IMG/VR virus record: IMGVR_UViG_3300043399_000877
Location: 62,001 to 126,000 of that record
DNA: 64,000 bases
Direction: 5' to 3' (one strand)
Shown here: one piece after another, positions 10,470 through 46,457 of the stretch
Layout of the letters: each line of letters opens with the position of its first letter
Position numbering within the stretch: the stretch's first letter is position 1
Notes under the pieces: model-generated
What the model was told of the DNA's origin: nothing
The model's input: only the letters and a program-made list of their open reading frames with translations
Databases searched by the model: none
Program-made: the position numbers and the translations under genes

Positions 10470-10525
10470 TCCTGCTTGACACGGGCGGCCGTGTATAGTA
10501 GTCAGGGGGCAGGAGGACAGGCAGC

Positions 10526-11000
10526 ATGGGCTATCAGCTAACAGACGAGCAGACGCGACGTGTCGCCGAGGGTGTGTTCAAATCCCTTTATTGGGATGAG
10601 TTCACCGGTGATCGTGATCGTTCTCCCTATGAGCCCTATACGGTTGAGGAATGCCGTGCGGGGGCCGAAGAACGACTCGACTGGATTCATAGCCATTGCA
10701 AGGATGGGTTCGGCGAACTGGAATCGTTCGCCAACTTTTTCTATGCTGCTGCTGACTATGATCGGGTAACCGATATGTGCAATGAAATGCTGAAACAAAA
10801 CTGGAAATGGGGATAACATGACCGAGCTCGTTGTTGAAAAAGTATCGCAAGTCGATCTTGAACCCACCTGGGAAGAAATCGAGATCCATGCTCACGATGA
10901 GGCGGTTTGGCAATCTCTGGAGTTCGACAGTCATTCCGACTGGGTTAACTTTTGCTGCATGATCGAAAACAACATGCGCCGCGAACGCGGCCTGATTTAA
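10526..11000 (+). CDS. Two small acidic hypothetical proteins (10526-10816, 10818-11000)
   Basis: Promoter at 10476; AGGAGG SD. Confidence 0.7.
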
Positions 11001-11067
11001 CCGAAAGACTGTTTGACAATGCTGACGCCAGCACATATAACTGGTGGACAAGACGAGGAGCAACGTC

Positions 11068-11802
11068 ATGAAAGCTGAATTTCACGGCCGGCTAATCATC
11101 GCGGGCGGTAATGCAAAAACCATCAAAGGTGATGGGCAAGGCTATCTTACGGCCATCATGTATCTGCGCCCGTGGCGCAACACGATCGACGGTGAGAGCC
11201 GCAATGTCTGCGCCAACGCCGAACTGGCTCAGTGCCATGTGGGCTGTTTGAACACCGCCGGTCGCGGCAAACAGAATAATGTCCAGAACTGGCGCATGGG
11301 CAAGACCGAACGTTTCTGGAAGGACCGCGACGGGTTTATGGCTGACCTCATTAACGACCTTCGAGTGTTCCAGAACAAGTGTCGGAAACTGGGTCTGCAA
11401 CCGTGCGTGAGGCTGAACGGCACCAGCGATATTCGCTGGGAGCTCATCCGTTTCAACGGACTGACGGTGTTTGAGCATTATCCGGACATTCAGTTTTACG
11501 ACTACACCAAGATCGCGAACCGTAAGACTGACTCAATCCCCAACTACGATCTCACGTTCAGTTATAGCGGCGCGAGTTCGGCATACCTTCGACAGGTGGA
11601 GATTGCGCGGGCGCGTGGTATGAACATCGCTGTGGTGTTCCGCAATCGCAAACAGATCCCCACCGAGTTTCTGGGACTGCCGGTTGTGGACGGTGACCGT
11701 GACGACCTGCGGTTTCTGGATCCCAAACAATCGGTCGTGGCACTGTATGCCAAAGGTCGTGCCAAACAAGATCAAACTGGATTCGTGGTGGACGTCAAAT
11801 GA
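11068..11802 (+). CDS. Phage Gp88-like protein (Cys-rich, radical-SAM-like fold)
   Basis: Motifs VCANA..CHVGCLNTAGRG, VRLNGTSDIRWE, FYDYTK, DGDRDDLRFLD and LYAKGRAK; promoter and SD present. Confidence 0.7.
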   Translation: MKAEFHGRLIIAGGNAKTIKGDGQGYLTAIMYLRPWRNTIDGESRNVCANAELAQCHVGCLNTAGRGKQNNVQNWRMGKTERFWKDRDGFMADLINDLRVFQNKCRKLGLQPCVRLNGTSDIRWELIRFNGLTVFEHYPDIQFYDYTKIANRKTDSIPNYDLTFSYSGASSAYLRQVEIARARGMNIAVVFRNRKQIPTEFLGLPVVDGDRDDLRFLDPKQSVVALYAKGRAKQDQTGFVVDVK

Positions 11803-13362
11803 GCGTAGAACCCTGCTGTCAGGACGAGAAAAACTGGATTCACATTCGGAGTCCGCAATGTTTCGAAACTGCGGAACACTTCGAACGAGATGTTCAGGAA
11901 GATGATTATCACTTCTACTTTTATCTCGAAATCCACTATTGCCGCGAGTGCGGCCGTGTCCTGCGACCGATGCGAGCGGAACTGTTCGAAACCGAGTATG
12001 TTGAGGACATCATCAGCACCGCAGAAGAACGCATGGCTGAGATCGAAAATCATCTAGACTGGGTGGACACCCATGTTCAGTCCATGCCGATTCCCGAGGG
12101 AAACCAGAAGTTGACCTACAATCTTCACAATCGGATTAACGAATTAAGTGAAACAATTCGTGACGAGTTAACCGACTTAGGTATTTTACGGGCTTGACAC
12201 TGTCCTGCACTTCTGCTAGACCGTGCTGGTAACAACGGAGAAGACAGATGGCAGCTTATGTGATCTATCACCGCGACACCACTCGGCTGGCACGGCGCGC
12301 CAACGGTGACGAATATTTTGCATCCGAGGCGGCAGCCAAGCGGCACCGCACTCGCTACCTGAATGACCAGGACTACCTGATCAGTGAGGCAGTCAACTTT
12401 CACGACAACATCGAACAGGTTGTGGCCCGGGTCAACATCCGGACCGGACAGACCTACATGGAGCCGGTCAATACTCCGAACTATATGAGCCCGGCTTCGG
12501 AAGCATATTGGCAAATGTGAGGACCGATGGGATATTATACCGATTACACTGTTGAAGCCCGTGGCTTCAAAAAACAAGACGAAGCCGAATTTTTCGCCTT
12601 CAAACTGGTGCAGAAAGGCGTTGTCAACAGTTCCACGCGGTTTCATTATGGCCAACTGGGTTCAGATTTTTCGGCTCAGTTCGAAGTTCACGAAACCAAA
12701 TGGTATGACTACGCGGATGACCTCCGGACTGCCAGCCTCTGGTTCCCGCACATCACGATCGATGTCGAAGGGTCCGGAGAGGAGAACGGCGATCAATGGC
12801 GCCACCGTTTCAGAAACGGTGAACACGAGCGGGTCGAGGCGGTCATCAGCTTTCCGGACTTTAAGGTGATCCGGTGAGCGACTATCGTGTAAGAAAATTC
12901 CAATACGACGAACCGGACGGGTTTTGCCGTATGGTTTGGGTTCGCTGGGGCAGGACCCAGGAAGAGGCTGATCGTATTGTGCGAGAGGACACCGGAGCAG
13001 ACCCCGAGTGGACTGTCCAGGTTGATGAGTATCGTGGTCCATACTGGCAGCACCGAACCGGGCTTGATGAGTTCGATCTCAAAAAATTTAGTTCGGTAGT
13101 TTAACAAAAAAACCAAAATAGTTGTTGACGGCAAGAACGTTAGATGCTATAAACAACTGGTAAACAACGCAAAACAGGAAAGCAAATGCAAGGTTACAAG
13201 ATCGTTTTTGAAAACACGGCTGGCGCGGCTGTCGACGAGCTGGACTTCGGAAACATCCGCAAGGCCCGCGAAGTTTTTGAAGCCCTGGTGCTGAAAGACT
13301 TTGCTCGGGCGATCCTGATGCAGGAGGACGGCACCACGCTGGACTCCAAGGTGCGGGCATAA
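11799..13362 (+). CDS. Five small hypothetical proteins (11799-12197, 12248-12520, 12527-12877, 12874-13104, 13186-13362)
   Basis: SDs and promoters at 12194 and 13125. The last gene (58 aa, MQGYKIVFE...) was found by manual translation. Confidence 0.7.
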
Positions 13363-13374
13363 CGCCCGCCATTT

Positions 13375-13451
13375 GGGGGATTAGCTCAATTGGTTAGAGC
13401 GCCGGACTCATAATCCGTAGGTTGCTGGTTCAAGTCCTGCATCCCCTACCA
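13375..13451 (+). tRNA. tRNA with CAT anticodon, probably Ile2 (lysidine type) rather than Met
   Basis: Cloverleaf: GGGGGAT/ATCCCCT acceptor stem, CT-CAT-AA loop, TTCAAGT T-loop, encoded CCA. The T arm resembles that of bacterial Ile2. Confidence 0.9.
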
Positions 13452-13455
13452 AAAT

Positions 13456-13538
13456 GGCCCCGTGGTGGAATGGTAGACACTGAAGACTTAAAATCTTCTG
13501 CCAATGGCGTGCCGGTTCGAGTCCGGCCGGGGCTACCA
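13456..13538 (+). tRNA. tRNA-Leu(TAA)
   Basis: GGCCCCG/CGGGGCT acceptor stem, CT-TAA-AA loop, long variable arm, encoded CCA. Confidence 0.93.
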
Positions 13539-13623
13539 TGTCTTTGACGATCACATCAGTCTTCGACGGAGGATCTTCAAAATAAAGTAAATATTGAAGC
13601 CCGTGGTGTGATCTTCTAAGACA
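13539..13623 (+). ncRNA. Candidate structured small RNA within the tRNA cluster
   Basis: TGTCTT/AAGACA and GATCACATCA/TGGTGTGATC closing helices, with an internal CTTCAA/TTGAAG hairpin. Confidence 0.4.
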
Positions 13624-13626
13624 TTC

Positions 13627-13656
13627 GGTTCCTTAGCTCAGCTGGATAGAGCAACT
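13627..13656 (+). pseudogene. 5' remnant of a tRNA (Arg-like)
   Basis: GGTTCCTTAGCTCAGCTGGATAGAGCAACT gives the 5' acceptor strand and D arm, then breaks off into GATAAATAC. Confidence 0.75.
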
Positions 13657-13674
13657 AGATAAATACTTTAAGAC

Positions 13675-13749
13675 GCCTCCGTGGTGAAAGGGATATCACA
13701 CGGGTCTTCTAAACCCAGGTTAGAGGTTCGAATCCTCTCGGGGGCGCCA
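13675..13749 (+). tRNA. tRNA-Arg(TCT)
   Basis: GCCTCCG/CGGGGGC acceptor stem, CT-TCT-AA loop, AGAGG-TTCGAAT-CCTCT T arm, encoded CCA. Confidence 0.9.
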
Positions 13750-13763
13750 ATTAAAGTATTAGT

Positions 13764-14564
13764 ATGAAAAAAGAAATATGTATTAAATGTGGTGGTCAGT
13801 TTTCGTTAAAAGGTGGAAACTTTTCTAGACATGTGAAATCCTGCAATGGCGTTAAAAAGGCCACTGTTCCAAAAGGAACCTGCGTCCATTGTTTTGAGGT
13901 TTTTGATTTAATTGATAAGCCCAAAGGTTGGATGGCAAACCATACCAGATGGTGTTCAAAAAATCCAAAACGAGAAGCGTATGTCGAAGCATTGATTTCG
14001 GGCAGCGGTAAAAACAATGTTACTCTCATGAACGAAAGCCGTAAACGGTCTGGCATCGTGAATCAATATGCAAAAGCAAAACTTTTAGGAAAACCGATAC
14101 CAGAAAACCCCGGAAAGGGAAAACCCGGGGTTCTTGGAAGAAGACATTCTGATAAAACTCGCGCCATCATTAGCCAAAAAGCCTTAGCTTCGAAACACCG
14201 ACGGTTAAAAAAGAATACTATATGGTATAATGGAGTTCTTTTGGATTCATCTTGGGAAGTCGAACTAGCCAAGAGACTGGACTACCTGGGTATCCGATGG
14301 ACTAGGCCCGATCCAATCCGGTGGACAGACGGAGACGAGGTCGAACACAACTACTTTCCGGACTTTTATTTGCCGGATTATGATTTATATCTAGATCCTA
14401 AAAACCCGCAAGCGATGAAAAGCCAACAGGAAAAACTGAAATACCTGTTGACGCAACACAAGAACGTCGTTATATTGCGAACATTAGGCGAGTGCAGGAG
14501 TTTTAGCCTGCAGGGACCGCCACCGTCATATCCCCACTTGTGCGTGGAAGGGGGTATGGTTTAA
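13764..14564 (+). CDS. Putative free-standing homing endonuclease (Zn fingers, NUMOD3-like motif, PD-(D/E)xK domain)
   Basis: CxxC...HxxxC motifs, GRRHSDKTRAIIS, and LDSSWE...YFPDFYL...YLDPK; AT-rich relative to neighbours. Confidence 0.75.
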   Translation: MKKEICIKCGGQFSLKGGNFSRHVKSCNGVKKATVPKGTCVHCFEVFDLIDKPKGWMANHTRWCSKNPKREAYVEALISGSGKNNVTLMNESRKRSGIVNQYAKAKLLGKPIPENPGKGKPGVLGRRHSDKTRAIISQKALASKHRRLKKNTIWYNGVLLDSSWEVELAKRLDYLGIRWTRPDPIRWTDGDEVEHNYFPDFYLPDYDLYLDPKNPQAMKSQQEKLKYLLTQHKNVVILRTLGECRSFSLQGPPPSYPHLCVEGGMV

Positions 14565-14634
14565 CAGAAACGCTCTGTGACTCCGACCTTTGCCAGTTAT
14601 AGGATGTCGCATAAAGGTTGAAACTTGGCTTAAT

Positions 14635-14666
14635 AAGAAGGTGGTATGGCAACATACCACCTTCTT
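14635..14666. terminator. Perfect 14-bp hairpin with GCAA loop
   Basis: AAGAAGGTGGTATG-GCAA-CATACCACCTTCTT. Confidence 0.75.
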
Positions 14667-14727
14667 CCTTGACTCGCATGTCTACGTCTGCTAAGATGAC
14701 AGAACAGACACAACCCAAGAGGACAGA

Positions 14728-15339
14728 ATGTCTAAGAAAAAGATGACCGGGCTGCACACTGGGACCATCGAACGTTGGATGAAACAGTTTGCTGGTGATC
14801 TGGATCTCGAGCCTCATTTTGAGAAGTTTCGGACGCTGTCCGAAACTCGTGCGCGACACGCTCGTGAAATCCATGCACTGGATACCGAATACTCACAAGG
14901 TGATATGACCAAACGCGAATACCGTGAACGCAAGAATCCGTTGGACTCGGTTATGAAGGGCATCAAGCCTCGTATGCGAAAACAATTTGACGTCATGGTC
15001 TCGCATATCCTGCTCAAAGGCATCGATTGCCGTTGCTATATTTGCGGTGACCGACTACAGGGTGACGAACCGCACAACCGTGATCATGTGTTTCCCAAAG
15101 TGATGGGCTTCGGCATCGGCGGAAATATGATGCCGGCCCATTATGAATGCAACCAGAACAAAGACAGCCGCTTCCCGTATGAATATGAAGTGGAATTGGC
15201 GGTTGCAGCATATGAGCATGCCGGGATGCCGTTTCATCCGCGTATGGGGCGGCGGAGTATTGCTGAATACGATCAGCGATACTGGGACATCATTCGTCGG
15301 CAAACCAGCTTCGAATACATTCATAGGATTGTGGAATAA
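14728..15339 (+). CDS. HNH-domain protein
   Basis: CYICG...RDHVFPKVMG...NMMPAHYECNQNK. Confidence 0.75.
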   Translation: MSKKKMTGLHTGTIERWMKQFAGDLDLEPHFEKFRTLSETRARHAREIHALDTEYSQGDMTKREYRERKNPLDSVMKGIKPRMRKQFDVMVSHILLKGIDCRCYICGDRLQGDEPHNRDHVFPKVMGFGIGGNMMPAHYECNQNKDSRFPYEYEVELAVAAYEHAGMPFHPRMGRRSIAEYDQRYWDIIRRQTSFEYIHRIVE

Positions 15340-15497
15340 TGGAAATTCTCATCGGACTGATCGTTGTGCTGGTATTGGTCGGTATCTTCGGATACATGAT
15401 CAAGATGGTTATCAATTTTTTCTGGCTGTTGATCAGCAGCCCCATGGTGTGGTTGATTCTGATTATCATTGCCTTGCTGATGTCACATTTTGTCTAA
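15339..15497 (+). CDS. Small two-helix membrane protein (52 aa)
   Basis: Manual translation: MEILIGLIVVLVLVGIFGYMIKMVINFFWLLISSPMVWLILIIIALLMSHFV. Confidence 0.6.
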   Translation: MEILIGLIVVLVLVGIFGYMIKMVINFFWLLISSPMVWLILIIIALLMSHFV

Positions 15498-15569
15498 GGC
15501 AACCAAAGAAAGCCGTTGACATTGTCAGTGACAGAGCGTATAAGAACAGGACACAAGATAGGAGACAAC

Positions 15570-16634
15570 ATGACGAAGATCCGTTTCAACCACGGTGAGT
15601 TTACGCATCGCGGCCAACATCTGAACCTTGCCGGTGTTGTGGCTACGATGACCAAGCCTTTCACTGTGGGCGTCAATGGGGCCTATGTGACTGTTGACGG
15701 CAGTCAGCTTCCGGGCTATCCGGAGCGCAACATTCGCATTCGCGTAAACGGCCGCGAAGATTATGAAGTTATCGAGGGCGTCGAGCCCGTGCGTGTGGGC
15801 GCTGCACCGGCGGCTGTAATGGCGTTCACTGCCGCAGAGCCCGTCGAACCGCCGCGTGTTGAGACCGATGACGAGATCATCGATCGTATGCGTCGTCGTT
15901 TCGAAGAGCTTACTGAAATGACCAAAGCTATCAAGCGCGGCGATGTGCGCGGACTGATCGTGTCGGGGCCGCCCGGCGTGGGCAAGTCGCACGGCATTGA
16001 AGAAGTCCTTGAGCGTTATGACGTCGTCGCTGCCCTGGGGCATCAGCCGCCCGTCTACGAGGTCGTCAAGGGTGCGACGAGTGCGTTGGGCCTCTACTGT
16101 AAGCTCTACGAGTTCAGCGCCCCGGACAACGTCGTGGTGTTCGATGACTGCGACAGCGTCTTGTTTGACGAAGTCGGTCTCAACATTCTCAAGGCGGCGC
16201 TGGACAGCAAGCGGACTCGCCGACTCAGCTGGAATACCGACAGCAACAAACTCCGGACCGAAGGCATTCCCAACAGCTTCGAGTTCCAGGGCTCGGTGAT
16301 CTTTGTTACCAACATCAAGTTCGACTCGGTGCGTAGCAACCGGCTTCGTGATCACTTGATGGCGCTCGAGTCGCGCTGCCACTACATTGACCTGACTATC
16401 GATACCACTCGCGAGAAGATGCTGCGTATCCGGCAAGTGGTGGGCGACGGCATGCTCAGTGACTACCGACTGTCGCAGGACACCAAGGACGCGATTGTCG
16501 AGTTCGTGGACACCAACAAGGATCGGCTGCGCGAGGTTAGCTTGCGGACCGTTTGCAAGGCTGCGGACTTGGCGCAGGCGTTCCCGAACAATTGGCAGAG
16601 CATGGCTGAGACCACGCTTATGCGGCGGGGGTGA
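15570..16634 (+). CDS. AAA+ ATPase
   Basis: Walker A GPPGVGKS, Walker B VVVFDD, sensor TN, ALESR; SD and promoter at 15516. Confidence 0.85.
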   Translation: MTKIRFNHGEFTHRGQHLNLAGVVATMTKPFTVGVNGAYVTVDGSQLPGYPERNIRIRVNGREDYEVIEGVEPVRVGAAPAAVMAFTAAEPVEPPRVETDDEIIDRMRRRFEELTEMTKAIKRGDVRGLIVSGPPGVGKSHGIEEVLERYDVVAALGHQPPVYEVVKGATSALGLYCKLYEFSAPDNVVVFDDCDSVLFDEVGLNILKAALDSKRTRRLSWNTDSNKLRTEGIPNSFEFQGSVIFVTNIKFDSVRSNRLRDHLMALESRCHYIDLTIDTTREKMLRIRQVVGDGMLSDYRLSQDTKDAIVEFVDTNKDRLREVSLRTVCKAADLAQAFPNNWQSMAETTLMRRG

Positions 16635-16692
16635 AAAAGTGTTTGACATGCCTGCCTTCTTCAACTATACCACAGACAAATAGGAGGCAGGC

Positions 16693-17922: not shown

Positions 17923-17934
17923 GAGAACACCGGA

Positions 17935-37678: not shown

Positions 37679-37737
37679 AGATCTTTTCAGGCAGACCTCC
37701 GTGCCCTCCCCTCCGGGTGCTAGTAAACCCGTCGTCC
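37679..37737 (-). ncRNA. Candidate small RNA, copy 2
   Basis: Minus-strand TTGACA(37771-37766)-N17-TAGACA promoter; same architecture as copy 1, with compensatory changes. Confidence 0.65.
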
Positions 37738-37991
37738 AGTTCTGTCTAGCAGATCGTCAGGGCCATGTCAATAACAAAAAGTTCGGTTTTTCTATAAAAA
37801 AGCTGTTGACTTGCTGGCCAGGGTTCAGTATAAGGACGGCATGGAAGCAACGAAACACGGACGACGCTGCAAAGCAACGCTGCACAAAATAAATGCGCTG
37901 GCAATGCAAACTGTCCTAAATTAGTTGTTGACATATTGAACCCCAGGTGCTATACAGACAGCACTGCAACACACAGAGAGAGGACTACAAG

Positions 37992-38426
37992 ATGACCAAG
38001 ATTTACAACGCCGCCGGTGTTTCCCGTGTCCGTGCTGACCAGCCGTTCAAGCTGCGTATGGCCACCGACATCGAATGGCGCCGGTTCGACCTGGCCCGCG
38101 GGCAGCACGTGGATGTGACGCTGGTCACGCTGCCCGAGTCGATGGACAAGATCCAGGCTGTCCAGTTCCTGCAGACGGCGCCGGAGTTTGTGGACAACGC
38201 CGAAGCGCAGGCCGTGTTCACTGCCTACTTGATGAGCAAGGGCGTGATCGAAAAGCCCAAGAAGAAGCGCGGCCGCCCGGCCAAGGCGAAGGTGGAGGAG
38301 GCTGCTGGCACCGAGGCGCCGGCTGCTGACGGGCTCGGCGACGAGCTGGTTGACGCTGCTGCCGAGACGCCGGCCGTGCAGGCGGTGGTGGAAGAGAACA
38401 CCGCCGAGTTCGAGCCCGAGCACTGA
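37992..38426 (+). CDS. AT-hook DNA-binding protein with acidic tail, paralog B
   Basis: PKKKRGRPAK; shares GVSR..K.RMA.D..WR.F.L...HVD...EAQ.VF.AYL.SKG.IE with paralog A. Confidence 0.8.
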   Translation: MTKIYNAAGVSRVRADQPFKLRMATDIEWRRFDLARGQHVDVTLVTLPESMDKIQAVQFLQTAPEFVDNAEAQAVFTAYLMSKGVIEKPKKKRGRPAKAKVEEAAGTEAPAADGLGDELVDAAAETPAVQAVVEENTAEFEPEH

Positions 38427-38551
38427 TGCAGGCAGGGGCGGCATTATAGTGCCGCCCCACCCACTTGTCAATAGCAAGAAAAAACTTTTTTGTTATTGAC
38501 AGTTGGGAACGGTTGCAGTATACAGATGGAACTGTAACACAGGAGCACACG

Positions 38552-41500
38552 ATGGCACAGGACGACGAAGTTAAGACGATCCACAACCGCCCGGCCGGCA
38601 ACTATAACGCTCGCTGGGATGCAATCGCCCGCAGCCGCGAGGCGCTGGATCAGCACGCCGACTTCTTCAGCGACCCCGAGCACCAGCGCCGCGTCGACGC
38701 CGTTCGCGCTGTCCTCGACGACTTCTTGCCGATCCGCAAGGAGCTCTACGTGAATCGGCGCGGGCTCAACACGAAGAAGCCGCGCACGGTGATCAAAGTG
38801 GAGTCGCCGCAGTTCCCCAACCACCTGCCGCGCAGCGAGCGTGAGGCTCGCTATCACAAGCCCCTGCGAGACCTGGGCGTTGAGATCAAGCTCAGCGTCA
38901 ACACCAACAGTTATTTGTATTCGATCGCATAAAAGTGCTTGACACTGGTGCCGGCGGCTGCTATGTTGCCGGCATACAGACAGAGGAGACAACGATGGCG
39001 ATGAAACAAAACAAGTTCACGACCCGCAAGTTCGACGGTGATAGCCAGGGATCCTGGGCTGTGTTCCGCAAGGCGGATGTGAAGGGCATCCGCGGCGTGG
39101 TGTTCTATGGGCAGGCCCGTCCGATTGTATGTGGGCTGACGAAGCGCGAGGCAGATTACTATCGCTCGCGCTGTGATGAAGGGCATTACCTCTAAAATAA
39201 GTGTTGACACGGGCCACGGCCCGTGTTACTACACTGACACAACGGCAAAACAAGGAGCAAATTACATGGACGAGCGTCAGAAGGCAGCGATGGAGTTCCT
39301 GGCCGAGGAACTCAGCCGCGAGCTGGAGTTCCAACAGTCAGACGAGTATCTGGGCGACGACATCGTGCCGTTGCTTCGCGAGATGCAGGAGCGCATCGAA
39401 CGCAACGACATTCCCACGCTGGCAGAGCTCGAGGCGTGGAGCCTGCGGGTGTATGATGTGACACGCGGCGACGCGATGTATGGCGACACTGACATGGCGG
39501 ACGGGCTCGTGGAGGGGCTGGCGGCGGCGCTGGAGTTGACTGAAGAAACTGCTTGACACTGACGCCCAGTCCTGCTATTGATGTGGGACTGGGCAACACA
39601 GGAGGCTGGCATGCGCTACTATCGAGTGAGAGCAGAGCACGTTCGGCAGCTGGCAATCGGGCTGGCTGCTGAGCAGATGGAGGAGATCCCGGGCGTGATC
39701 CTCATGGCGGCCGGGGCGGATGAGGTGTTCGATCGTCAGGCAATCTGGGTGCTGGCAAGCGAGCTGGCGCTGGGCAATCAGCTTCAGGACATCGTGTGGC
39801 GCTATAACGGCGGCAACTGGTGCGAGGTGGCTGAGATCGACGAGGAGACTGCTGAAGGCTTTTGTTGAAAAAAGTGGTTGACACTGGCTCTGGCTGATGC
39901 TATAACTGGAGCATGGAAACAACGGAGGCGACGATGACGCTGACAAGGGAACAGGTTGTGGCGCTGGTGACCCGGACCGATGCGGTGGCGATGCATGCCA
40001 TCGGCCGTGCGCTGGTGCACTTGTTGAACCGTCAGACGCGCGAGGAGAGCCGCGATAATGTGACGCGCAACCTCAACGACGTGGGCTTCACGCCCGCCGA
40101 TGCGCGCATGGGTTGCATCCACGCCAAATGCTACATCAAGCGCGGCGAGCTCGAGGAATGGCAGGTTCGCTACTGGCAGCGGCCCAACGCCAAAGGCGTA
40201 CCGCGTATCGCCAAGTATTGGCGACAGCTGGCCGAGGAAGCGGCGCGGAAAGCGGTTGCAAGGGCGGCCGCTTGATGCTATACTGGTCGGGCAACACGAG
40301 GAGACACCGATGGAACTAGATATCGCCGAGATCGTCGCCGCCCTGCAAGCTCACCTCCAGACGGCCACTGTGGTCAACGGCTGGCGCTATCCGGTCGAGC
40401 AGGTCATCTGCGCGGACGGCGCCCGCTTCAGCGTCCAGGCCAGCCGGTATACCTACTGCCAGCCGCGCAACGATGTCGGGCCCTGGACGCACGTCGAGGT
40501 GATGACCATCACCGATGGGGTCACGCCCAGCTGCTGGACTCACGACGCCGGGGACAATCTGGCCGGCTATGTGCCGATCGAAGCCGTTGCGAAAGAAATT
40601 TGGCTTCGTGGAAAAAAGCTCTTGACTGGCACTGACATTCCTGCTATCACGTGTGAGTAGGCAACAAGGAGCAACGACGATGAAAGTGACGCGCAAAAAT
40701 CCGTTCACCGGCCAGATGCTGACCCGTGAGATCCCCGTGACCGAGGAGCAACTGATGGCCTGGCAGGATGGGGAGCTGATCCAGAATGCCATGCCCAACA
40801 TCAGCGCGGAAGACCGCGAGTTCATCAAGAGCGGCATCACGGCCGAGCAATGGGAAGAAATGTTCGGCTGACGGCAAAATAACGGTTGACTCCCGGAAGG
40901 GAGTCAGCTATACCACTGACATGGAAAACAGGAGAGCAAGATGTTCGGATACAAGAAAGTCGGAACGGTCAAGACCTTCGAAGCCACGGTGCGGGCCGGG
41001 ATGGCGCTCACCAAAGTGACTGTCAATGCCGACAGCACCTATGCGGCGCGCAAGCAATTGGAGGGCATCTACGGTGCCAACAACGTCAAGAGTGTTCGCC
41101 AACTCTGAAGAAAGTGGTTGACTCCCGGAAGGGAGTCAGCTATACCACTGACATGGAAGCAAGGAGCAACGAGATGGACACTGGTTGGAGACTGGCCACC
41201 AAGGAAGAGATCCGGGAGATGCAGGATCTCCCTGGCGCGCCGCATGTGACTTTCGGCTGCACCTGCTGCGGCATGGTGAACTGGACTGCCAAGAACCTCG
41301 CGCTGAACAGCGACGGTCGCTACACCGGAGCTCGCAACATCTTCGTGAGCGACTGGACTCGCGGCGAGTGTGAGTGCCCCAGCACCCACCTGCGGGCCGT
41401 GGTGCGGGAAAAAGAATCCGTCCTGGCCTAAGAAAGTGGTTGACTCCCGGAAGGGAGTCAGCTATAACACTGACATGGAAGCAAGGAGCAACGAGATGAC

Positions 41501-43306
41501 CGACACTGTGAACCCGGAACTGAAGCCCGTCACCGAGATCCGTGACGAGATGCTGGCCGCGGCGCGTGATGCCGCCAACCGCAAGTTCGCCGAGATCGGC
41601 GGCGACCGCTACGCCTGCGGCTTTGCGTGGGTGACTGTTTACCCCAAACACAAGGGCAACACGCGGGCGGGCCGCGCCGAGCGCGAGACGCTGCGGGCGA
41701 TGGGCTTTGAGCTGGACTACACCGGCAAGGCGTTCCAGCTCTGGAACCCCAGCAACCACTCCTGTCAGAACGTGGACACCAAGGAGGCCGGCGCACAGGC
41801 TGCGGCTTCGGTGCTGCGCCGCTACGGGATCGAGGCCTGGGCGGGGTCGCGACTGGACTGAAAATAACTGTTGACACGGGCTCCATGCAGTGCTATAAGT
41901 GCTGCATGGAAACAACGGAGGCACGGATGCGCGCTTACGATCCCCGAGACGGTTACTTTACCTACAACCCCCAGACCCGGACCTTCAGCGCCGATGCCAG
42001 CGACCTCGCCTGGCCCGCGGGTTCGGCCTGCTATGAGTTCCAGCTCAAGAGCGAGCTCACCGGCACGTTCGTCAACATGGAGCGCATCGATCCCACGCGG
42101 AATGCCGAGGGCGAGATCCTGTGGTTCAACTACCGCAGCCGGTGCATCACCAGCGAAGATCCCACAGTGGATCTCCATCAGACCTATTATGCGAGGGTGT
42201 TCAACGACTGAAGAAAGTGGTTGACATCCAGGTCGGCATCCGCTAGGGTGCCGACATACAACGAGGAGCAGACGGATGGACGAGTTCATGACAGAGTTGG
42301 TGCCGGTTGCTGAGTGGGAATGGTGGTTGTGGCGCGTGACCTATAGGAGCGAATTCGGCGACAGTCAATCGTTTTTTGTGGTCAGCACCGAAGATCATCT
42401 GGACCTCGAAGTCGAGGACCGTTGGCCCAGCGATTGGTTCACCGAATACACATACGAGAAGATGTCGCGCTGTGGCGCTCCCCGGCAGCTCTGGTGTGCT
42501 GCTCGCAAGTGCCGGTATCCGGAATACGCCTGGGACGCTGGTGCCCGCGAGGCCGCTCGTCTCGGCTTCCAGATCACCGACCCGCAGCCGGAGATTTATG
42601 CCGAACTGGCATAAAAAACTGTTGACAGCTGGCAGACGGTCAGCTATACACATGACATGGAAGCAAAGAGGAGCAACAAGATGCGACCAGTGATTATGAA
42701 AGCCGGCACCTACTACATCGGTGACCTGTGCTATGTGCTGCACGACAGCTGGGATGAAGTTTGCAGCCTGATTATTCAGGGGCAGGCGGTGCTGGAGGGC
42801 CACTTCACCCTCAAAGACGGCCGCGAGTTCGCCATGTTCAACACCGCCTACGGCGATGGCACCTACACCGACAACCTGGGCGGGCGCTATCCGGTGGACG
42901 CCGGCAACATCGGCTGCATCTTGCTGGAGTCGGTGGACCGCTCGGATCAGGACGACGTCACGTTGGGCGTGACGCACACCTTCGATGCGGACTTTGTCTG
43001 CGACACCGACGGGCGCACCATCGAGTTCGGCAGTATCCGGATCCCAACCGCAGACGACGAGGACGACTGGGAAGATGACGACCTTTACGACGACTGGGAA
43101 GAAGATTTGTTCGACGAGCCCTGATTCTGCTTGACACTGTTGCCGGCAACTGTTATGTTGCCGGCACACAGGGAGGACGTGATGGACGAACAAGACGACT
43201 ACTTTTCCGAGACTACCGAAGGTCGCTGGACTGCCGGTTGGTGGATCGTGCCCAGTGTGATCCTGGGGGTAGTGATGCTGGTCGGACTCGGCTGGTGGAT
43301 AGCGTA
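38552..43306 (+). CDS. Fourteen monocistronic small hypothetical genes (38552-38932, 38995-39195, 39266-39556, 39611-39868, 39934-40275, 40309-40660, 40680-40871, 40941-41108, 41174-41431, 41496-41861, 41927-42211, 42276-42614, 42681-43124, ~43181-43306)
   Basis: Each is preceded by its own -35/-10 promoter and SD. Confidence 0.75.
40884..41498 (+). repeat. Three near-identical promoter/RBS cassettes (40884-40926, 41108-41176, 41430-41498)
   Basis: GGTTGACTCCCGGAAGGGAGTCAGCTATA(C/A)CACTGACATGGAA; copies 2 and 3 match at 68 of 69 nt. Confidence 0.95.
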
Positions 43307-43395
43307 AGCGACTTTCCGCTTACTCACCCAACTAACTGTTGACATACAGGCTGAGGCTGCTATAAGTAACATACAACGACAAAAGGAGAAAACCA

Positions 43396-44016
43396 ATGAA
43401 GATGCGAACCATCCTCGGCGGTGTTGCTTCCTCAGCCGTGATTGGTGCTATGGCAGTGATTTACATAACGGCGGGCGAAGAGGCATACGCCGCCATAGAC
43501 CCAACAGAACTGATGATCCCGAGCCCGACTTATGATAGCGAGCGAATGATCGCCCTAGAGCCCGAGCTCACCAGTTCTGTTGCAACAATCCGACCGAGGC
43601 CGCGACCCGTAGGACTGGAGCGTCTGCCAGAATCGGCGAACAACCAGGACGAACAATACTGCCTAGCGCAGAACATCTATTTCGAAGCACGAGGCGAGGG
43701 CAGAATTGGCCAGGAGGCCGTTGCATGGGTCACGCTCAATCGCGTAATGGACCCGCGCTGGCCGGACACGATCTGCCGGGTCGTGTGGCAGGATAACCAG
43801 TTTAGCTGGACACACGACGGGCGGGGCGACACGCCGCGCGCCGGTGACATGTGGGATCAGGCCCGGGCGATTGCTGCACGAGTGACCGCCGAATACAATC
43901 CGGATCTCGATCCCACCGAAGGCAGTGTAATGTTTCACGCTGACTATGTCAACCCCGAATGGGAAGACAACTTCGTTCGGGTAGTGCAGATTGATGCTCA
44001 CATTTTTTACAGATAG
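43396..44016 (+). CDS. SleB/Hydrolase_2 family cell wall hydrolase with N-terminal membrane anchor
   Basis: CLAQNIYFEARGE..VAWVTLNRV..WPDTICRVVWQ..QFSW..FHADYVNPEW..HIFY. Confidence 0.9.
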   Translation: MKMRTILGGVASSAVIGAMAVIYITAGEEAYAAIDPTELMIPSPTYDSERMIALEPELTSSVATIRPRPRPVGLERLPESANNQDEQYCLAQNIYFEARGEGRIGQEAVAWVTLNRVMDPRWPDTICRVVWQDNQFSWTHDGRGDTPRAGDMWDQARAIAARVTAEYNPDLDPTEGSVMFHADYVNPEWEDNFVRVVQIDAHIFYR

Positions 44017-44072
44017 TGATTGACACACACCTCCCGTCTTGTTATACGATACTGGCAAGACGGGAGATACAC

Positions 44073-45089
44073 AATGCGGCGCGAAACGATCCAGAATTTG
44101 TTGATTGCTGCCATCGAAGACGACGACGTCGAGACGGCCGAAGAGTGGCAGGCCATGCTGGACCTGATGGACGCGAACGGTTGGCTGGTGATAGAAGTTT
44201 GAAATAACTGTTGACACGGGCAGGACTGTCTGCTATAACACTGGCAACAAGGAGCAAACGATATGAAATACGCGATGATTTTGGCCACCCTGCTGCTGTC
44301 GGCTTGCGCGGACACTCCGCGACTCACCAGCCCGGCGGAGGCGCTGGCTGACCGTGCAGCACACGATGCCTACCTGGCCGGCAAGTATGATCCCGAACTC
44401 GTGGCTGACTGCGCCTACTATGATCTGGAGGAATGCTGATGAACATCGCACAAATGGTCCGTGACTTCAGCATCGCCATTCTGGCCATGCTGGTGGTGAT
44501 GTTGCTGCTGTGGGCCCGCTGGTACCCGGCGGAATACGGCCGCTGGCTGCAACAGATCGACACTGCCCGGTTCGAGATGCTGGACTGCGACTGCACCGAA
44601 CCGCTGGAGTAAGACCCCGCTGTTGGGTGTGGCACGGACCGACTGTTGGTGCCCCGCCCGCAAAGATCACGACGGCAGGCTGCGACAACGAAATAGAGCT
44701 TGACGCTGTGACACGGGACTGCTATAACACTGGCAACAGACACGGACACCACCGGACACTGACGGTGGACCGGAGCGGGCCGACACGGAGGACAGGACGT
44801 GAACCAGACAACTGAACAGAAAGATACGGCAGAGGCCGAGGCGGCGCAATACCGCTGGTTGACGGTGAGCGGAATACTCCGCACCGGCGGCGACTGGGTC
44901 ACTATCTTCGAGCAGCGGACTGACCGCCCGCTGACCCCGGAGGAAGTGACGGCTGCCCGAGGTGAACTGCGGCCGCTGCTGGAATCCGTCAGCGAAAGTT
45001 TTCGAGACGATCGGCAGGCGACGCTGACCTTCGACAGTGTTCGAGTTCATGTGCAGAGCTGGGCTGCGATCCGTATCGAATTGAGATAA
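44073..45089 (+). CDS. Small hypothetical genes including a small lipoprotein (LLLSAC) and 44799-45089
   Basis: Promoters at 44020, 44211 and 44700; SDs. Confidence 0.6.
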
Positions 45090-45473
45090 CATACCGGGAA
45101 CCGATCCCGATACAGAACCTCCGTCACTGCGGGTTTGCTCCCCCCGGGCGACGGAGTGTCGGTGCTGGTGGTGTGTTGCGTTGATTGTGTTGGGTGCGTT
45201 TGCTCCCGCGCCCCGCGCTGTCCGCCGCCACCAGCACCCATTTTTTTCAGTGCCAGCCGCGCCGTCTCCAGTCGCCACCGCCGCCGTCTCCAGTCGCGCC
45301 ATCAAACGCCACCAGTCATTCAACGCCATAGCACACAACATGCACACCAATACGGCAGTTTGTCAAGTAACGATTTGTTACAAAGCACGTTTCAAACTGT
45401 AACATTTTGTTACTTGACGTGCGCTGCACAGACTGCTATAAACAGCTTGTAAGCAACGCAGAGGAGCAACTGC

Positions 45474-45677
45474 ATGTATAACAGTTTTTACGTTGTTGTG
45501 CGTAACGCTGCAAACAAGCGCAGCGTTGTAGGGCAGGACTGTGGAACGCTTGAGTATGCAACGCTGATGGCGGTAGCAGAGCGCAAGCGCACGGGGCGTG
45601 AGGTGTGGGTGCGCGAATACGAGCAAGAGGGCGTGTTTGGCAAGCGCAAGCTGCTGAGGGAACATGCAGTAGCATAA
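45474..45677 (+). CDS. Small proline-free protein in the TC/CC-free island
   Basis: Promoter at 45414; GAGGAG SD. Confidence 0.75.
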   Translation: MYNSFYVVVRNAANKRSVVGQDCGTLEYATLMAVAERKRTGREVWVREYEQEGVFGKRKLLREHAVA

Positions 45678-45772
45678 CACAGAAAAAACGGCAATGCAAG
45701 CGCATTTTGTGCTTGCATTGTGCTGCGCATAGTGCTATAAACAGTTTGTAAGCAACGCAGAGGAGCAACGCA

Positions 45773-46060
45773 ATGCAATACGCTACTGTTTACAAACACA
45801 AAAACAACGCAATTTACAACGTAAACGCTGTTGTAAAATACAAATACGACGAGAGCGACGTGCTGCGTGTGCTTGTGCGCAAAGAGCGTGTGTATGTTGT
45901 GTGCTGCGGGGAGCTGGGGGAAATTACAAGCAAGTGTGCAAACTTGCTGCGCGTGTTTGCAAAAGTGCTTGCTGCACTTGGGCTGCACAACTGCAAACAG
46001 TTGCATACGGGCAACTACGGGACAAAAGACGGGGGAACGTTTGTAGTTTTTGCACGTTAA
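45773..46060 (+). CDS. Small proline-free protein in the TC/CC-free island
   Basis: TTGCAT-N17-TATAAA promoter; GAGGAG SD. Confidence 0.75.
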   Translation: MQYATVYKHKNNAIYNVNAVVKYKYDESDVLRVLVRKERVYVVCCGELGEITSKCANLLRVFAKVLAALGLHNCKQLHTGNYGTKDGGTFVVFAR

Positions 46061-46148
46061 AAAAAATGCAGTGCAAGTGCATTTTGTGCTTGCACTGCGT
46101 CGCATAAACTGCTATACACGACTTGTAAGCAAATAGAGGAGCAACTAA

Positions 46149-46352
46149 ATGCTTAACATGCGTAAACGTATTGCTGCTGCACATGCGCGCTATGCGCAAA
46201 AACAAGAGCAAAGCGCACAATTGCGCGCTGCAATTGCAACAGGGGGCAGCTATGCGCTGTGGCGTGCTGCAATTGCAGAGGAGGACGCTGCAAAGCAACG
46301 GCTGCAACGGCTGTATGCTGAGGCAGGCTATGCTGACGCGGTTGTAGACTAA
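46149..46352 (+). CDS. Small proline-free helical protein in the TC/CC-free island
   Basis: TTGCAC-N17-TATACA promoter; GAGGAG SD. Confidence 0.75.
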   Translation: MLNMRKRIAAAHARYAQKQEQSAQLRAAIATGGSYALWRAAIAEEDAAKQRLQRLYAEAGYADAVVD

Positions 46353-46457
46353 CACAAAAACAAATGCAGTGCAAGCGCATTTTGTGCTTGCACTGTGTTG
46401 TGCAGTGTGCTATAAGTAAGTGACCGGGGGCAGACCCCGCTGCCCAGGAGAGACCGG

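What the first reader, a model, noticed from the sequence alone, without database searches (positions are those of the whole stretch)
10476..46420. Cassette-like early region: about one promoter per gene, with upstream stop codons built into the -35 box
Seen: more than 50 TTGAC-N17-TATA-type promoters in about 40 kb, becoming one per gene from 38.5 kb. In at least five cases the TGA inside TTGAC is the stop codon of the preceding gene (12194, 24395, 28429, 28841, 39553). Established: repeated early-promoter stem-loop cassettes (PeSLs) mediate modular gene shuffling in T4-type phages. Inference: the promoters double as recombination joints for a swappable effector array and as an RNAP sink.
Basis: partly seen in the sequence, partly recalled or inferred. 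Interest (0 to 1): 0.6.

Follow-up and report, generated by a model that had tools for sequence, protein, structure and literature searches.

The report
Promoter-per-gene early array of jumbo phage
A 38-kb stretch of an uncultured 382-kb phage carries about 55 near-consensus bacterial promoters in front of some 80 small same-direction genes, and related phages indicate that these promoter units are also the places where genes are gained, lost and reordered.

Summary
Exact TTGAC-N18-TATA occurs 39 times in the window against 0.38 expected. A weight matrix finds 54 sites on the + strand between 10.4 and 48.2 kb and 3-6 on the - strand. From 38.5 kb there is one promoter per gene. Six upstream genes (not five) end on the TGA inside TTGAC, but this follows from tight packing: 6 of the 11 ORFs that reach the box stop there, against 1/3 expected.

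The region is the presumed early, host-RNA-polymerase-read block of a 381,886-bp phage related to PA5oct and Atu_ph07. It contains rIIA, rIIB, a tRNA nucleotidyltransferase, ATPases, three tRNAs and mostly ORFans. It is a GC3-rich island (0.6-0.85, against 0.25-0.40 elsewhere), and relatives share this contrast.

The recombination-joint idea is supported indirectly:
- Shared island genes are reordered between relatives, while the flanking replication genes stay collinear.
- A 90%-identical pair of relatives differs by gene-sized indels bounded by promoter cassettes.
- In this window, 69-nt cassettes that are 99% identical flank unrelated genes, and other cassettes are mosaics.

It is not a true PeSL, because terminators are absent. 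The RNA-polymerase-sink idea and promoter activity remain untested. Verdict: a new variant of a known kind.

The parts
10476..48130 (+). GC-rich, promoter-dense early-gene island: about 82 co-directional genes and 54 matrix-scored promoter cassettes. The + strand block as a whole starts at promoter 7735.
7735..10469 (+). Left, lower-GC part of the + strand block: one promoter at 7735, then about 10 small overlapping ORFs without promoters of their own.
10476..10504 (+). Promoter cassette, 25.4 bits; ATG at 10526.
11013..11041 (+). Promoter cassette, 24.6 bits; ATG at 11068 (GP88-family gene).
12194..12222 (+). Promoter cassette; the TGA of TTGAC is the stop of gene 11799-12197.
13125..13153 (+). 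Promoter cassette in front of gene 13186-13362 and the tRNA trio.
13375..13749 (+). tRNA(CAT), tRNA-Leu(TAA) and tRNA-Arg(TCT). The same trio lies in the islands of three relatives.
14448..14476 (+). Promoter cassette inside the 3' part of endonuclease-like ORF 13764-14564; next gene at 14728 (HNH).
15516..15544 (+). Promoter cassette; ATG at 15570 (AAA-type ATPase, phrog_1250, shared with relatives).
16643..16671 (+). Promoter cassette with a 12-bp stem. The 5' arm lies in the spacer and the 3' arm covers the AGGAGG of gene 16693-17922 (tRNA nucleotidyltransferase).
18172..18200 (+). Promoter cassette; ATG at 18228.
19155..19183 (+). Promoter cassette; ATG at 19207.
19667..19695 (+). Promoter cassette; start at 19743.
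20346..20374 (+). Promoter cassette inside the end of gene 20154-20411; ATG at 20402 (rIIA).
20402..23401 (+). rIIA (20402-22534) and rIIB (22547-23401) homologues, which are classical T4 early genes. Promoter 22230-22258 lies inside rIIA.
23408..23436 (+). Promoter cassette with a strong stem bracketing the -10 (z -6.3).
23852..23880 (+). Promoter cassette; ATG at 23909.
24395..24423 (+). Promoter cassette; the TGA of TTGAC is the stop of gene 24177-24398.
25569..25597 (+). Promoter cassette; the TGA of TTGAC is the stop of gene 25414-25572.
26229..26257 (+). Promoter cassette; stem whose 3' arm covers the AGGAGG of gene 26282-26431 (z -6.1).
26961..26989 (+). Orphan promoter cassette; the next + strand gene is 987 nt away. 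A - strand homing-endonuclease-like ORF (27217-27906) lies in between.
27926..27954 (+). Promoter cassette; ATG at 27977.
28429..28457 (+). Promoter cassette; the TGA of TTGAC is the stop of gene 27977-28432.
28841..28869 (+). Promoter cassette; the TGA of TTGAC is the stop of gene 28482-28844.
29497..29525 (+). Promoter cassette overlapping the end of gene 28896-29513.
30061..30089 (+). Promoter cassette with a palindromic spacer (z -2.1).
30605..30633 (+). Promoter cassette; ATG at 30662.
32748..32776 (+). Promoter cassette, the only one for about 7 genes (32799-35405).
35708..35736 (+). Weaker cassette (TAGACA as the -35); start at 35775.
36133..36161 (+). Promoter cassette; ATG at 36190.
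36787..38570 (+). Tandem duplication of about 0.9 kb. Each unit holds a 113-nt element, a pair of promoters (36914 + 37011; 37806 + 37928) and an AT-hook paralogue (37067-37603; 37992-38426).
37630..37658 (+). One of only three clear intrinsic terminators in the island. The others are 46906-46932 and 47758-47780.
38496..46416 (+). One-promoter-per-gene stretch. Cassettes start at 38496, 38939, 39204, 39553 (stop in TTGAC), 39878, 40256, 40622, 40886, 41118, 41440, 41871, 42221, 42622, 43131, 43339 (spacing variant), 44020, 44211, 44700, 45414, 45713, 46090 and 46388. Each spans 29 nt.
40876..41498 (+). Three near-identical cassettes (40876-40944, 41108-41176, 41430-41498; the last two are 99% identical over 69 nt, from stop codon to ATG). 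They flank the unrelated genes 40941-41108 and 41174-41431.
45406..46416 (+). Cassette family with mosaic halves: 45713 and 46388 share the 5' half (0.91) but not the 3' half (0.21); 45414 and 45713 share the 3' half (0.96).
44020..44048 (+). Promoter cassette; 14-bp stem whose 3' arm covers the Shine-Dalgarno sequence of gene 44074-44202 (z -6.1).
47798..48130 (+). The last two cassettes (47798, 48102), at the right edge of the island, with no close ORF.

Best explanation
This is the host-takeover (early) gene block of an uncultured 382-kb phage of the PA5oct/Atu_ph07 lineage. It is built from about 55 compact promoter-leader cassettes. Each cassette is roughly 60 nt: the stop codon of the upstream gene sits in or next to an A-rich tract, followed by TTGACA, a 17-bp spacer ending in TGC, TATA(A/C)N, a conserved CA about 7 nt on (inferred start site), a purine-rich leader of about 12 nt, AGGAG and ATG.

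The host RNA polymerase with its main sigma factor is inferred to fire all cassettes at once on entry, and almost nothing terminates between them. In three cassettes a stem pairs the spacer with the downstream ribosome-binding site. Only RNA started at the gene's own promoter would then be translatable, as for T4 gene e.

The block is written in GC3-rich codons, unlike the AT-rich rest of the genome. It also carries tRNAs with anticodons CAT, TAA (Leu) and TCT (Arg); UUA, AGA and AUA (readable by a CAT tRNA only if its C34 is modified) are the three checked codons most depleted in the island and common elsewhere. I infer that early genes are tuned to the host's own tRNA pool, while the early promoters also start the tRNA supply that the later genes need.

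Because the cassettes are direct repeats sharing 30-70 nt, the phage's homologous recombination uses them as crossover points. Single promoter-plus-gene units are therefore deleted, inserted and moved with their orientation kept.

Shown: the motif statistics, the anatomy, the codon split, the reordering, and the cassette-bounded indels in relatives. Inferred: promoter activity, timing, the codon rationale, and that the same recombination operates in this genome.
For: Motif: 39 exact matches against 0.38 expected. There are 54 + strand sites against 3-6 on the - strand, and 54 of the 56 + strand sites in the genome lie in the island. The motif is invariant at TTG, T-12 and A-11, with G-14 in 41/54 and A at the presumed +1 in 34/54. 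In 46/54 cassettes the -10 ends 21-47 nt before a start codon that has a Shine-Dalgarno sequence.

Early character: rIIA and rIIB. The cultured relative PA5oct depends on host RNA polymerase, uses TTGAC/TATAAT promoters, and has a 39-kb one-direction array of small early genes.

Codons: GC3 is 0.61-0.87 in the island and 0.25-0.40 elsewhere. Per 1000 codons, island against rest: TTA 0.8 / 18.1, ATA 3.1 / 30.2, AGA 2.9 / 14.5. The tRNA trio sits behind promoter 13125 and is conserved in the islands of G001, G002 and G003. Orthologues in five relatives keep the GC3 split, 0.49-0.62 against 0.24-0.34. Sites of the same promoter type lie just upstream of the 24-tRNA cluster.

Recombination: island order is scrambled (tau -1.0 to +0.21) with orientation kept, while 8/8 flanking genes are collinear. 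L101/L102 indels A, C and D are bounded by cassettes with chimeric survivors, and one spacer has been copied between two cassettes of L101. A 69-nt, 99% identical cassette pair flanks unrelated genes. Similarity of the 5' and 3' cassette halves is uncorrelated (r = 0.11), with clear mosaics. Cassettes are more alike within a genome than between genomes.

Hairpins: 16/54 cassettes have z < -2. The T4 precedent is in PMC3014915.
Against: - There are no transcript data, so promoter use and timing are inferred from sequence and from relatives only.
- The -10 lacks the normally critical T at -7 (9/54), so an E. coli-type sigma-70 might read these sites poorly.
- Intergenic DNA here is almost entirely promoter. 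Any viable gene-sized rearrangement must therefore break in a promoter whatever the mechanism, which weakens the breakpoint argument.
- The clean indels come from one pair of relatives, not from this genome.
- Overall cassette homogenisation in this window is weak (0.30-0.35 within, against 0.22-0.39 between) and is concentrated at 38.9-46.4 kb.
- The codon rationale rests on an unknown host.
- PA5oct, the cultured relative, has neither the GC rise nor the promoter density.
Confidence: 0.62

Rival explanations
1. This is an ordinary early region. The promoters are only promoters. Cassette similarity reflects shared functional constraint plus a few local tandem duplications, and rearrangements hit promoters merely because nothing else lies between genes. 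No recombination role is needed.
For: Intergenic spacers of about 60 nt are filled by the promoter and leader. Mean pairwise identity of the unconstrained positions is only 0.32. One true tandem duplication exists at 36787-38570. The stop-in-box cases fit chance under compaction.
Against: Identical 15-nt spacers and leaders (99% over 69 nt) sit in front of unrelated genes. Mosaic cassettes exist, with r = 0.11 between the two halves. In L101/L102 the short alleles carry exactly one chimeric cassette, and a spacer has been copied between cassettes 760 nt apart. Order is scrambled with orientation always kept, next to a perfectly collinear flank of similar divergence.
Confidence: 0.25
2. The island is foreign DNA recently taken from a GC-rich donor (the host or another phage). 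That would explain its composition and its separate promoter style.
For: GC is 49-60% against 31-47% elsewhere. Most genes are ORFans. Three homing-type endonucleases lie inside it.
Against: Relatives whose helicases are only 63-79% identical have the same island at the same place beside the helicase. They share 9-10 of its genes, and the GC3 excess holds in the orthologues themselves. The same promoter type also occurs at the tRNA clusters elsewhere in the genome. The contrast is therefore old and maintained, not a recent import.
Confidence: 0.05
3. The dense strong promoters act mainly as a sink that titrates host RNA polymerase away from host genes, and the small ORFs are secondary.
For: There are 54 near-consensus -35 boxes with A-tracts in 38 kb. 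Several cassettes have no nearby ORF: 26961, 36914, 37806, 44700, 47798 and 48102.
Against: 46/54 cassettes are placed 21-47 nt before a start codon with a strong Shine-Dalgarno sequence. The ORFs show a clear coding signature, and 9-10 are conserved in relatives. One genome copy offers about 55 sites, few compared with the polymerase pool (general knowledge, not tested).
Confidence: 0.05
4. The repeated units are sites for a dedicated site-specific recombinase, like an integron cassette array, rather than substrates of general homologous recombination.
For: The layout is cassette-like, with one short repeat per gene. Palindromes occur in about 30% of units.
Against: No integrase or recombinase domain was found among the 45 proteins of the island and its flanks scanned against Pfam, 30 of them also against PHROGs. 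The conserved core is exactly a -35 / extended -10 promoter at a fixed distance from Shine-Dalgarno and ATG. The palindromes differ in sequence and position between units. Crossovers in L101/L102 fall in different parts of the cassette.
Confidence: 0.03

Closest known systems
PeSL cassettes (promoter-early stem-loops) of the hyperplastic regions of T4-type phages (Arbiol et al. 2010, PMC2839356; Comeau et al. 2014, PMC4122927)
   Same: Both are short repeated units with an AT-rich tract, a strong sigma-70-type early promoter and a Shine-Dalgarno sequence, placed between ORFans. In both, indels between close relatives have breakpoints in the units, chimeric units are left behind, and orientation is kept.
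   Different: No terminator stem-loop precedes the promoter, and only three clear terminators occur in 38 kb. Where stems exist they lie inside the spacer or bracket the -10. Density is far higher (54 in 38 kb), in a single block. The phage lineage is different (PA5oct/Atu_ph07-related jumbo phage). The block has its own codon dialect. Mini-circles were not tested.
Early ORFan array in the 39-kb terminal repeat of Pseudomonas phage PA5oct (Lood et al. 2020, PMC7318152; NC_071039 1-39080)
   Same: PA5oct is a related phage (helicase 53% identical). It has a block of about 39 kb holding about 105 small, one-direction, mostly unknown genes that are highly transcribed early. It depends on host RNA polymerase and uses TTGAC/TATAAT promoters.
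   Different: PA5oct genes are mostly operonic, with only 5 pattern-level promoters in the repeat and 32 predicted genome-wide. There is no GC or GC3 rise. No protein of the window's island has a tblastn match in the PA5oct repeat. Whether the window's island is a terminal repeat is unknown.
Host-takeover module of Bacillus phage SPO1 (Stewart et al. 1998; summarised in PMC6873191)
   Same: Both are clusters of small early genes with strong host-type promoters and strong ribosome-binding sites that serve host shut-off.
   Different: The SPO1 module is 12.4 kb with 26 genes in about a dozen operons. It belongs to a Gram-positive host and an unrelated phage. No cassette shuffling has been described, and there is no sequence homology.
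Hairpin-masked translation starts of T4 genes e, soc, 49 and I-TevI (review PMC3014915)
   Same: In cassettes 16643, 26229 and 44020 the 5' arm of a strong stem lies upstream of the inferred start site, and the 3' arm covers the Shine-Dalgarno sequence. Read-through RNA would be masked and promoter-proximal RNA open.
   Different: In T4 the internal promoter is a late one and the device delays expression. Here both promoters are of the same early type, so the stem would insulate a gene from upstream read-through rather than time it. This applies to 3 of 54 cassettes only and is untested.
Caulobacter RpoD promoter consensus TTGaCgS / GCtANAWC (quoted in PMC8144410)
   Same: The commonest -10 region here, GCTATAAC, fits GCtANAWC, including the lack of T at the last position. 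The -35 is TTGAC.
   Different: Only about a third of the sites end in C, and many read TATACA or TAGACA. The host is unknown. Relatives of this phage use ordinary TATACT or TATAAT.

Membership tests
PeSL (T4-type promoter-early stem-loop cassette) | Strong sigma-70-like early promoter (-35, -10) with an AT-rich upstream tract and a Shine-Dalgarno sequence | tested here: met
   Consensus over 54 sites. A+T is 0.64 in the 9 nt just upstream of the -35 region against 0.45 for the island. AGGAG lies before 46 starts. This is sequence-level only; activity was not measured.
PeSL (T4-type promoter-early stem-loop cassette) | Adjacent stem-loop upstream of the promoter that terminates transcription | tested here: not met
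   Stops lie 7-22 nt before the -35, leaving no room. Terminator-like sites number 25 and 28 against 18.5 and 16.2 in shuffles, mostly weak or on the - strand. Only 37630, 46906 and 47758 are convincing. Stems occur in 16/54 units, but inside the promoter.
PeSL (T4-type promoter-early stem-loop cassette) | Located between non-essential ORFans in a hyperplastic region | tested here: met
   Most of the 45 scanned proteins have no functional label. Gene content and order differ among relatives.
PeSL (T4-type promoter-early stem-loop cassette) | Indels and replacements between close relatives have their breakpoints in the units | tested here: inconclusive
   Met in the related pair L101/L102 (indels A, C and D). 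It could not be tested for this genome, because no close relative was accessible. Internal footprints are consistent.
PeSL (T4-type promoter-early stem-loop cassette) | Mini-circles formed by recombination between neighbouring units | not testable with these tools
   This needs inverse PCR or reads.
Canonical sigma-70 (E. coli-type) promoter | TTGACA, 17 +/- 1 bp spacer, TATAAT with A at -11 and T at -7 | tested here: not met
   The -35, the spacing, T-12 and A-11 are invariant or nearly so, but -7 is A19 C15 G11 T9. A scan requiring T at -7 is at chance level. A TGn extended -10 is present (T-15 in 31/54, G-14 in 41/54), which may compensate (inference).
Integron-type gene cassette array | Integrase gene, attC sites after each promoterless gene, one common promoter | tested here: not met
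   No integrase domain was found in the scanned proteins. The repeats are promoters in front of genes, not sites behind them.
T4-type rII early genes | Homology to the RIIA and RIIB families | tested here: met
   20402-22534 matches phrog_612 RIIA at E 2.8e-121 over its full length. 22547-23401 matches phrog_609 RIIB at E 2.4e-70.

The most novel reading that the evidence does not exclude
A clade of uncultured jumbo phages keeps a separate 'host-dialect' compartment. Its early genes use GC3-rich, host-like codons, and each sits behind its own minimal promoter-leader cassette. The same compartment delivers the three tRNAs (CAT, Leu-TAA, Arg-TCT) that unlock the AT-rich remainder of the genome. 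The cassettes, many with the -10 held in the loop of a palindrome, are at once promoters, translational insulators and homology patches, so the compartment evolves one gene at a time. This would be a codon-gated temporal programme coupled to a self-shuffling gene array, and it has not been described for any phage group.
Probability: 0.3. Interest if true: 0.75.

Novelty: new variant of a known kind. Interest (0 to 1): 0.55.

Why it matters
If the cassettes fire and recombine as inferred, promoter-mediated modular shuffling is not a T4 peculiarity. It would be a recurrent way for large phages to turn over their host-takeover and counter-defence genes, here in a very clean form: no terminators, about one promoter per gene, and 54 units in one block.

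The conserved split in codon usage, with the matching early tRNA trio, makes a long-standing idea directly testable in one genome: that early genes are tuned to the host's tRNA pool and late genes to the phage's own tRNAs.

The array is also a ready catalogue of about 80 small early proteins for screens of host shut-off and anti-defence functions, and a set of about 55 natural promoter variants with an unusual -10.

Tried and rejected
The real spacing is one base longer.
- The E. coli-type promoter scan is at chance level because of the -7 position.
- Stop codon in the -35 as a design feature: rejected. Six of 11 is compatible with 1/3.
- Paralogy as the reason for identical cassettes: rejected. 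Only one paralogue pair exists among 85 proteins.
- Terminator stem-loops between genes: not found.
- Hairpins as a general property: promoter windows are on average no more stable than coding windows of the island (-12.5 against -13.1 kcal/mol). Only a subset of 16/54 stands out against shuffles.
- Recent foreign origin of the island: rejected by the relatives.
- Close relatives of this genome: none in phage records, IMG/VR or JGI metagenomes by megablast, peptide patterns or an exact 27-nt cassette.
- The PA5oct block around the ATPase homologue, and the PA5oct terminal repeat, as direct equivalents: neither is GC-rich, promoter-dense or homologous.
I did not try to get it another way, and read laying was not used.
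- Stop-codon recoding, prompted by a tRNA with anticodon CTA: standard-code ORFs already cover 0.84-0.98 of every genome section, so there is no sign of it. No code other than table 11 was used for any translation.

Full report
**What the window is.** The window is bases 62001-126000 of a 381,886-bp IMG/VR virus record rated complete. Its DnaB-type helicase (48975-50396, - strand) is 53% identical to that of Pseudomonas phage PA5oct, 51% to Agrobacterium phage Atu_ph07 and 48% to Sinorhizobium phage Phosso. Hundreds of uncultured relatives exist at 63-79%. This is therefore a jumbo phage of that lineage. Genome GC runs mostly between 31 and 47%, but window positions of roughly 8-48 kb form an island of 49-60% GC. 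The island is also the only sizeable + strand block in the first 200 kb.

**The observation.**
- Exact TTGAC-N18-TATA occurs 39 times in the window, 34 of them on the + strand, against 0.38 +/- 0.62 in shuffles.
- A weight matrix seeded on the 33 exact matches in the region and refined four times gives 54 + strand sites between 10476 and 48130, and 3-6 on the - strand. There is a clear gap between real sites (15.6 bits or more) and background. The matrix is self-trained, so the exact count is the independent figure.
- Genome-wide, 54 of 56 + strand sites lie here. The 22 - strand sites are scattered, several just upstream of the two large tRNA clusters.
- From 38496 to 46838 there are 22 promoters for 23 genes.

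**Stop codons in the -35.** Only 11 upstream ORFs reach the -35 at all. Any of them in the right frame must stop at TGA, and 6 of 11 against an expected third is unremarkable (p about 0.12). More regular is that 32 stops lie 2-22 nt upstream of the -35, often as TGA or TAA opening the A-tract. The intergenic DNA is simply filled by the promoter.

**Anatomy of a cassette.**
- An A-rich tract comes first (A+T 0.64 in the 9 nt just upstream of the -35 region, against 0.45 for the island).
- TTGACA follows: TTG is invariant (one exception at the second T), and A and C are each present in 49/54.
- The 17-bp spacer ends in T(31) G(41) C(36).
- Then TATA: T-12 and A-11 are invariant.
- Position -8 is A or C. 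Position -7 has no preference (A19 C15 G11 T9).
- A conserved CA lies 6-7 nt on, with A in 34/54. I take this as the start site.
- The leader is almost free of T, and is followed by AGGAG and ATG.
- In 46 of 54 cassettes the -10 ends 21-47 nt before a start codon.

The missing T at -7 explains why the standard scan sees nothing (11 against 7.0 expected; 16 against 14.6). The commonest form, GCTATAAC, fits the Caulobacter RpoD consensus GCtANAWC quoted in PMC8144410. A TGn extended -10 is also present. Which sigma factor reads these sites is unknown because the host is unknown. Relatives of the phage use ordinary TATACT or TATAAT.

**Genes.** My own gene model (codon log-odds plus ribosome-binding site) gives about 82 + strand genes between 10.5 and 46.9 kb. 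Labelled genes:
- rIIA (20402-22534) and rIIB (22547-23401)
- a tRNA nucleotidyltransferase, 16693-17922
- two AAA-type ATPases, 15570-16634 and 30849-31925
- a GP88-family protein
- a cell-wall hydrolase, 43396-44016
- an L7/L12 C-terminal-domain protein, 33187-33558
- two AT-hook paralogues
- three homing-type endonucleases: 13764-14564, 14728-15339, and 27217-27906 on the - strand
- three tRNAs at 13375-13749

The rest are ORFans or 'unknown function' families. Only one paralogue pair exists among 85 proteins.

**Codon dialect.**
- GC3 is 0.61-0.87 in island genes and 0.25-0.40 elsewhere.
- CTG makes up 54% of Leu codons in the island and 11% outside.
- Per 1000 codons, island against rest: TTA 0.8 / 18.1, ATA 3.1 / 30.2, AGA 2.9 / 14.5.
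- The tRNAs in the island read UUA (anticodon TAA) and AGA (TCT). The third has anticodon CAT, which means Met, or Ile-AUA if lysidine-modified; I could not tell which.
- The same trio, in varying order, sits in the islands of relatives G001, G002 and G003.
- Orthologous island genes in five relatives keep the GC3 excess, 0.49-0.62 against 0.24-0.34 in the flanking genes. The split is therefore old and maintained, not a recent import.
- The genome carries 42 tRNAs in all.

That early and late phage genes can differ in codon bias is known in general (PMC5683454). The size of the split here, and the matching early tRNAs, are what stand out. The rationale is inference: early genes are translated with host tRNAs, and later genes with phage tRNAs.

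**Relatives.** Five relatives (G001-G005) have the same arrangement: a GC-raised block dense in TTGAC-N17/18-TATA, on the same side of the helicase. For example, G004 has 28 sites in 15 kb. Nine to ten island genes are shared at 30-61% identity, all on the + strand. Their order relative to the window is scrambled, with Kendall tau of +0.21, -1.0, -0.47, -0.05 and +0.20. As a control, the eight shared genes of the adjoining replication module (26-76% identity) are in identical order in all five relatives.

**Direct breakpoint evidence.** Among all fetched loci, one pair is close enough: L101/L102 at 90% nt identity. Their ATPase is 54-55% identical to the window's.
- L102 carries +569 nt between cassettes 8587 and 9156, and +356 nt between cassettes 13965 and 14321. 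In each case L101 has a single cassette. Its upstream flank matches the first L102 cassette and its downstream flank matches the second.
- A third indel (+822 nt, two ORFs) leaves L101 with a cassette whose upstream part matches L102 cassette 13053 and whose spacer and leader match 13407.
- A fourth difference is a tRNA-Pro/Ala pair present only in L102.
- The spacer of L101 cassette 4675 equals that of L101 cassette 5439 and neither L102 partner. This indicates copying between cassettes.

This is the pattern described for PeSLs (PMC2839356). It comes from one pair of relatives.

**Footprints in the window itself.**
- Cassettes 41108-41176 and 41430-41498 are 99% identical over 69 nt, exactly from stop codon to ATG. 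They flank the unrelated gene 41174-41431. A third copy, at 40876, shares the 41-nt core.
- This pair lies 7.5 SD above the mean pairwise identity of unconstrained positions (0.32 +/- 0.09).
- Cassette halves recombine. Pair 45713/46388 scores 0.91 for the 5' halves and 0.21 for the 3' halves. Pair 45414/45713 scores 0.55 and 0.96. Pair 13125/45414, 32 kb apart, scores 0.27 and 0.75. Over all pairs the two halves correlate at only r = 0.11.
- Cassettes are more alike within a genome than between genomes. This is strong in L102 and G001 and weak in the window.

**Hairpins.** Sixteen of 54 cassettes fold far better than shuffles (z < -2). On average, though, promoter windows are no more stable than GC-rich coding windows. 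The stems lie in the spacer, sometimes including the -35 (30061, 39204, 40886, 41118, 41440). Alternatively they bracket the -10 (16643, 23408, 26229, 28429, 38939, 39553, 41871, 42221, 43131, 44020). In 16643, 26229 and 44020 the 3' arm covers the Shine-Dalgarno sequence while the 5' arm is upstream of the inferred start. This is the logic of T4 genes e, soc, 49 and I-TevI (PMC3014915). For the others I have no tested explanation.

**Comparison with known systems.**
- The nearest concept is the PeSL of T4-type phages. Promoter, AT tract, ORFan context and cassette-bounded indels match. The terminator stem-loop does not: only three clear terminators occur in the island.
- The nearest cultured analogue is PA5oct. 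It depends on host RNA polymerase, has 32 predicted TTGAC/TATAAT promoters, and has a 39,080-bp terminal repeat with about 105 small one-direction genes that are highly transcribed early. That repeat is neither GC-rich nor promoter-dense, and no island protein has a match in it. Nor is the PA5oct block around the ATPase homologue GC-rich or promoter-dense.
- SPO1's host-takeover module is a functional analogue.

**Limits.** There are no transcript data. No close relative of this genome was reachable. The host is unknown. Because intergenic DNA is almost all promoter, breakpoints at promoters are partly forced by selection. The stronger arguments are the exact one-cassette versus two-cassette structure, the mosaics and the copied spacer.

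**Verdict.** This is a new variant of a known kind: promoter-cassette-mediated modular shuffling, here without terminators, at extreme density, in another phage lineage, and coupled to a conserved codon split. The RNA-polymerase-sink idea and the 'built-in stop' idea add nothing that the data require.

Noticed in passing
window 2-2359 (- strand), continuing to genome 61345 (L113:6346-9360): A 1004-aa phage protein carries a sigma-70 region 1.1 domain (Pfam PF03979, E 8e-12, above the curated cut-off) at residues 453-503 and nothing else recognisable. It lies just left of the early island. It could act on host RNA polymerase.
   Followed up: partly
window 2356-5019 (- strand): An 887-aa protein has a KOW motif just under the Pfam cut-off (21.7 against 22.3 bits) and a weak PHROG 'transcription antiterminator' match (E 2.8e-7). 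It has no tblastn match in 50,697 phage records.
   Followed up: partly
window 36787-36899 and 37678-37790: A duplicated 113-nt element (81% identical) holds a - strand promoter of the same type (matrix hits at 36880 and 37771). It faces away from the + strand promoters 36914 and 37806. It is a candidate small or antisense RNA with no ORF.
   Followed up: partly
window 38443-38471 (- strand): A perfect TTGACA-N17-TATAAT sits on the - strand, back to back with + promoter 38496 and pointing antisense into gene 37992-38426. Similar - strand sites lie at 36733-36761 and 42342-42368.
   Followed up: no
window 13375-13749; L093 6843-7094; L094 16940-17187; L096 16545-16863: The tRNA trio CAT / Leu-TAA / Arg-TCT is conserved in the early islands of this phage and three relatives, but in three different orders. 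PA5oct also lists Met(CAT), Leu(TAA) and Arg(TCT) together.
   Followed up: partly
genome 17688-17762 (- strand, outside the window); L094 5197-5272: A tRNA with anticodon CTA (amber-reading; ARAGORN calls it Pyl) is present in this genome and in relative G003. Standard-code ORFs cover 0.84-0.98 of every genome section, so there is no sign of recoding.
   Followed up: partly
window 33187-33558: A 123-aa early protein contains part of the ribosomal L7/L12 C-terminal domain (PF00542, E 2.8e-10), the part of L12 that recruits translation factors. It may interfere with translation.
   Followed up: no
window 13764-14564 (+), 14728-15339 (+), 27217-27906 (-): Three homing-type endonuclease genes lie inside the island, in locally lower-GC DNA. 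The third is the only clear - strand gene of the block and follows the orphan promoter 26961.
   Followed up: partly
L101 3589; L102 7481, 13407, 14321; window 40886, 41118, 41440: One spacer type, in which TTGACT pairs with AGTCA(A/G) just before the -10 (giving a -35-like hexamer on the opposite strand), recurs in genomes whose shared proteins are only about 55% identical. This suggests the palindrome itself is selected.
   Followed up: no
L105, L106, L108, L110, L111 (more distant relatives): These lineages carry the ATPase homologue in a uniformly AT-rich context (33-38% GC), with only 2-4 pattern-level promoters per 16-21 kb. Their close pairs (88-92% nt) are collinear with at most one indel of about 180 nt. 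This is a natural contrast to the promoter-dense arrays, but it rests on one motif pattern.
   Followed up: partly
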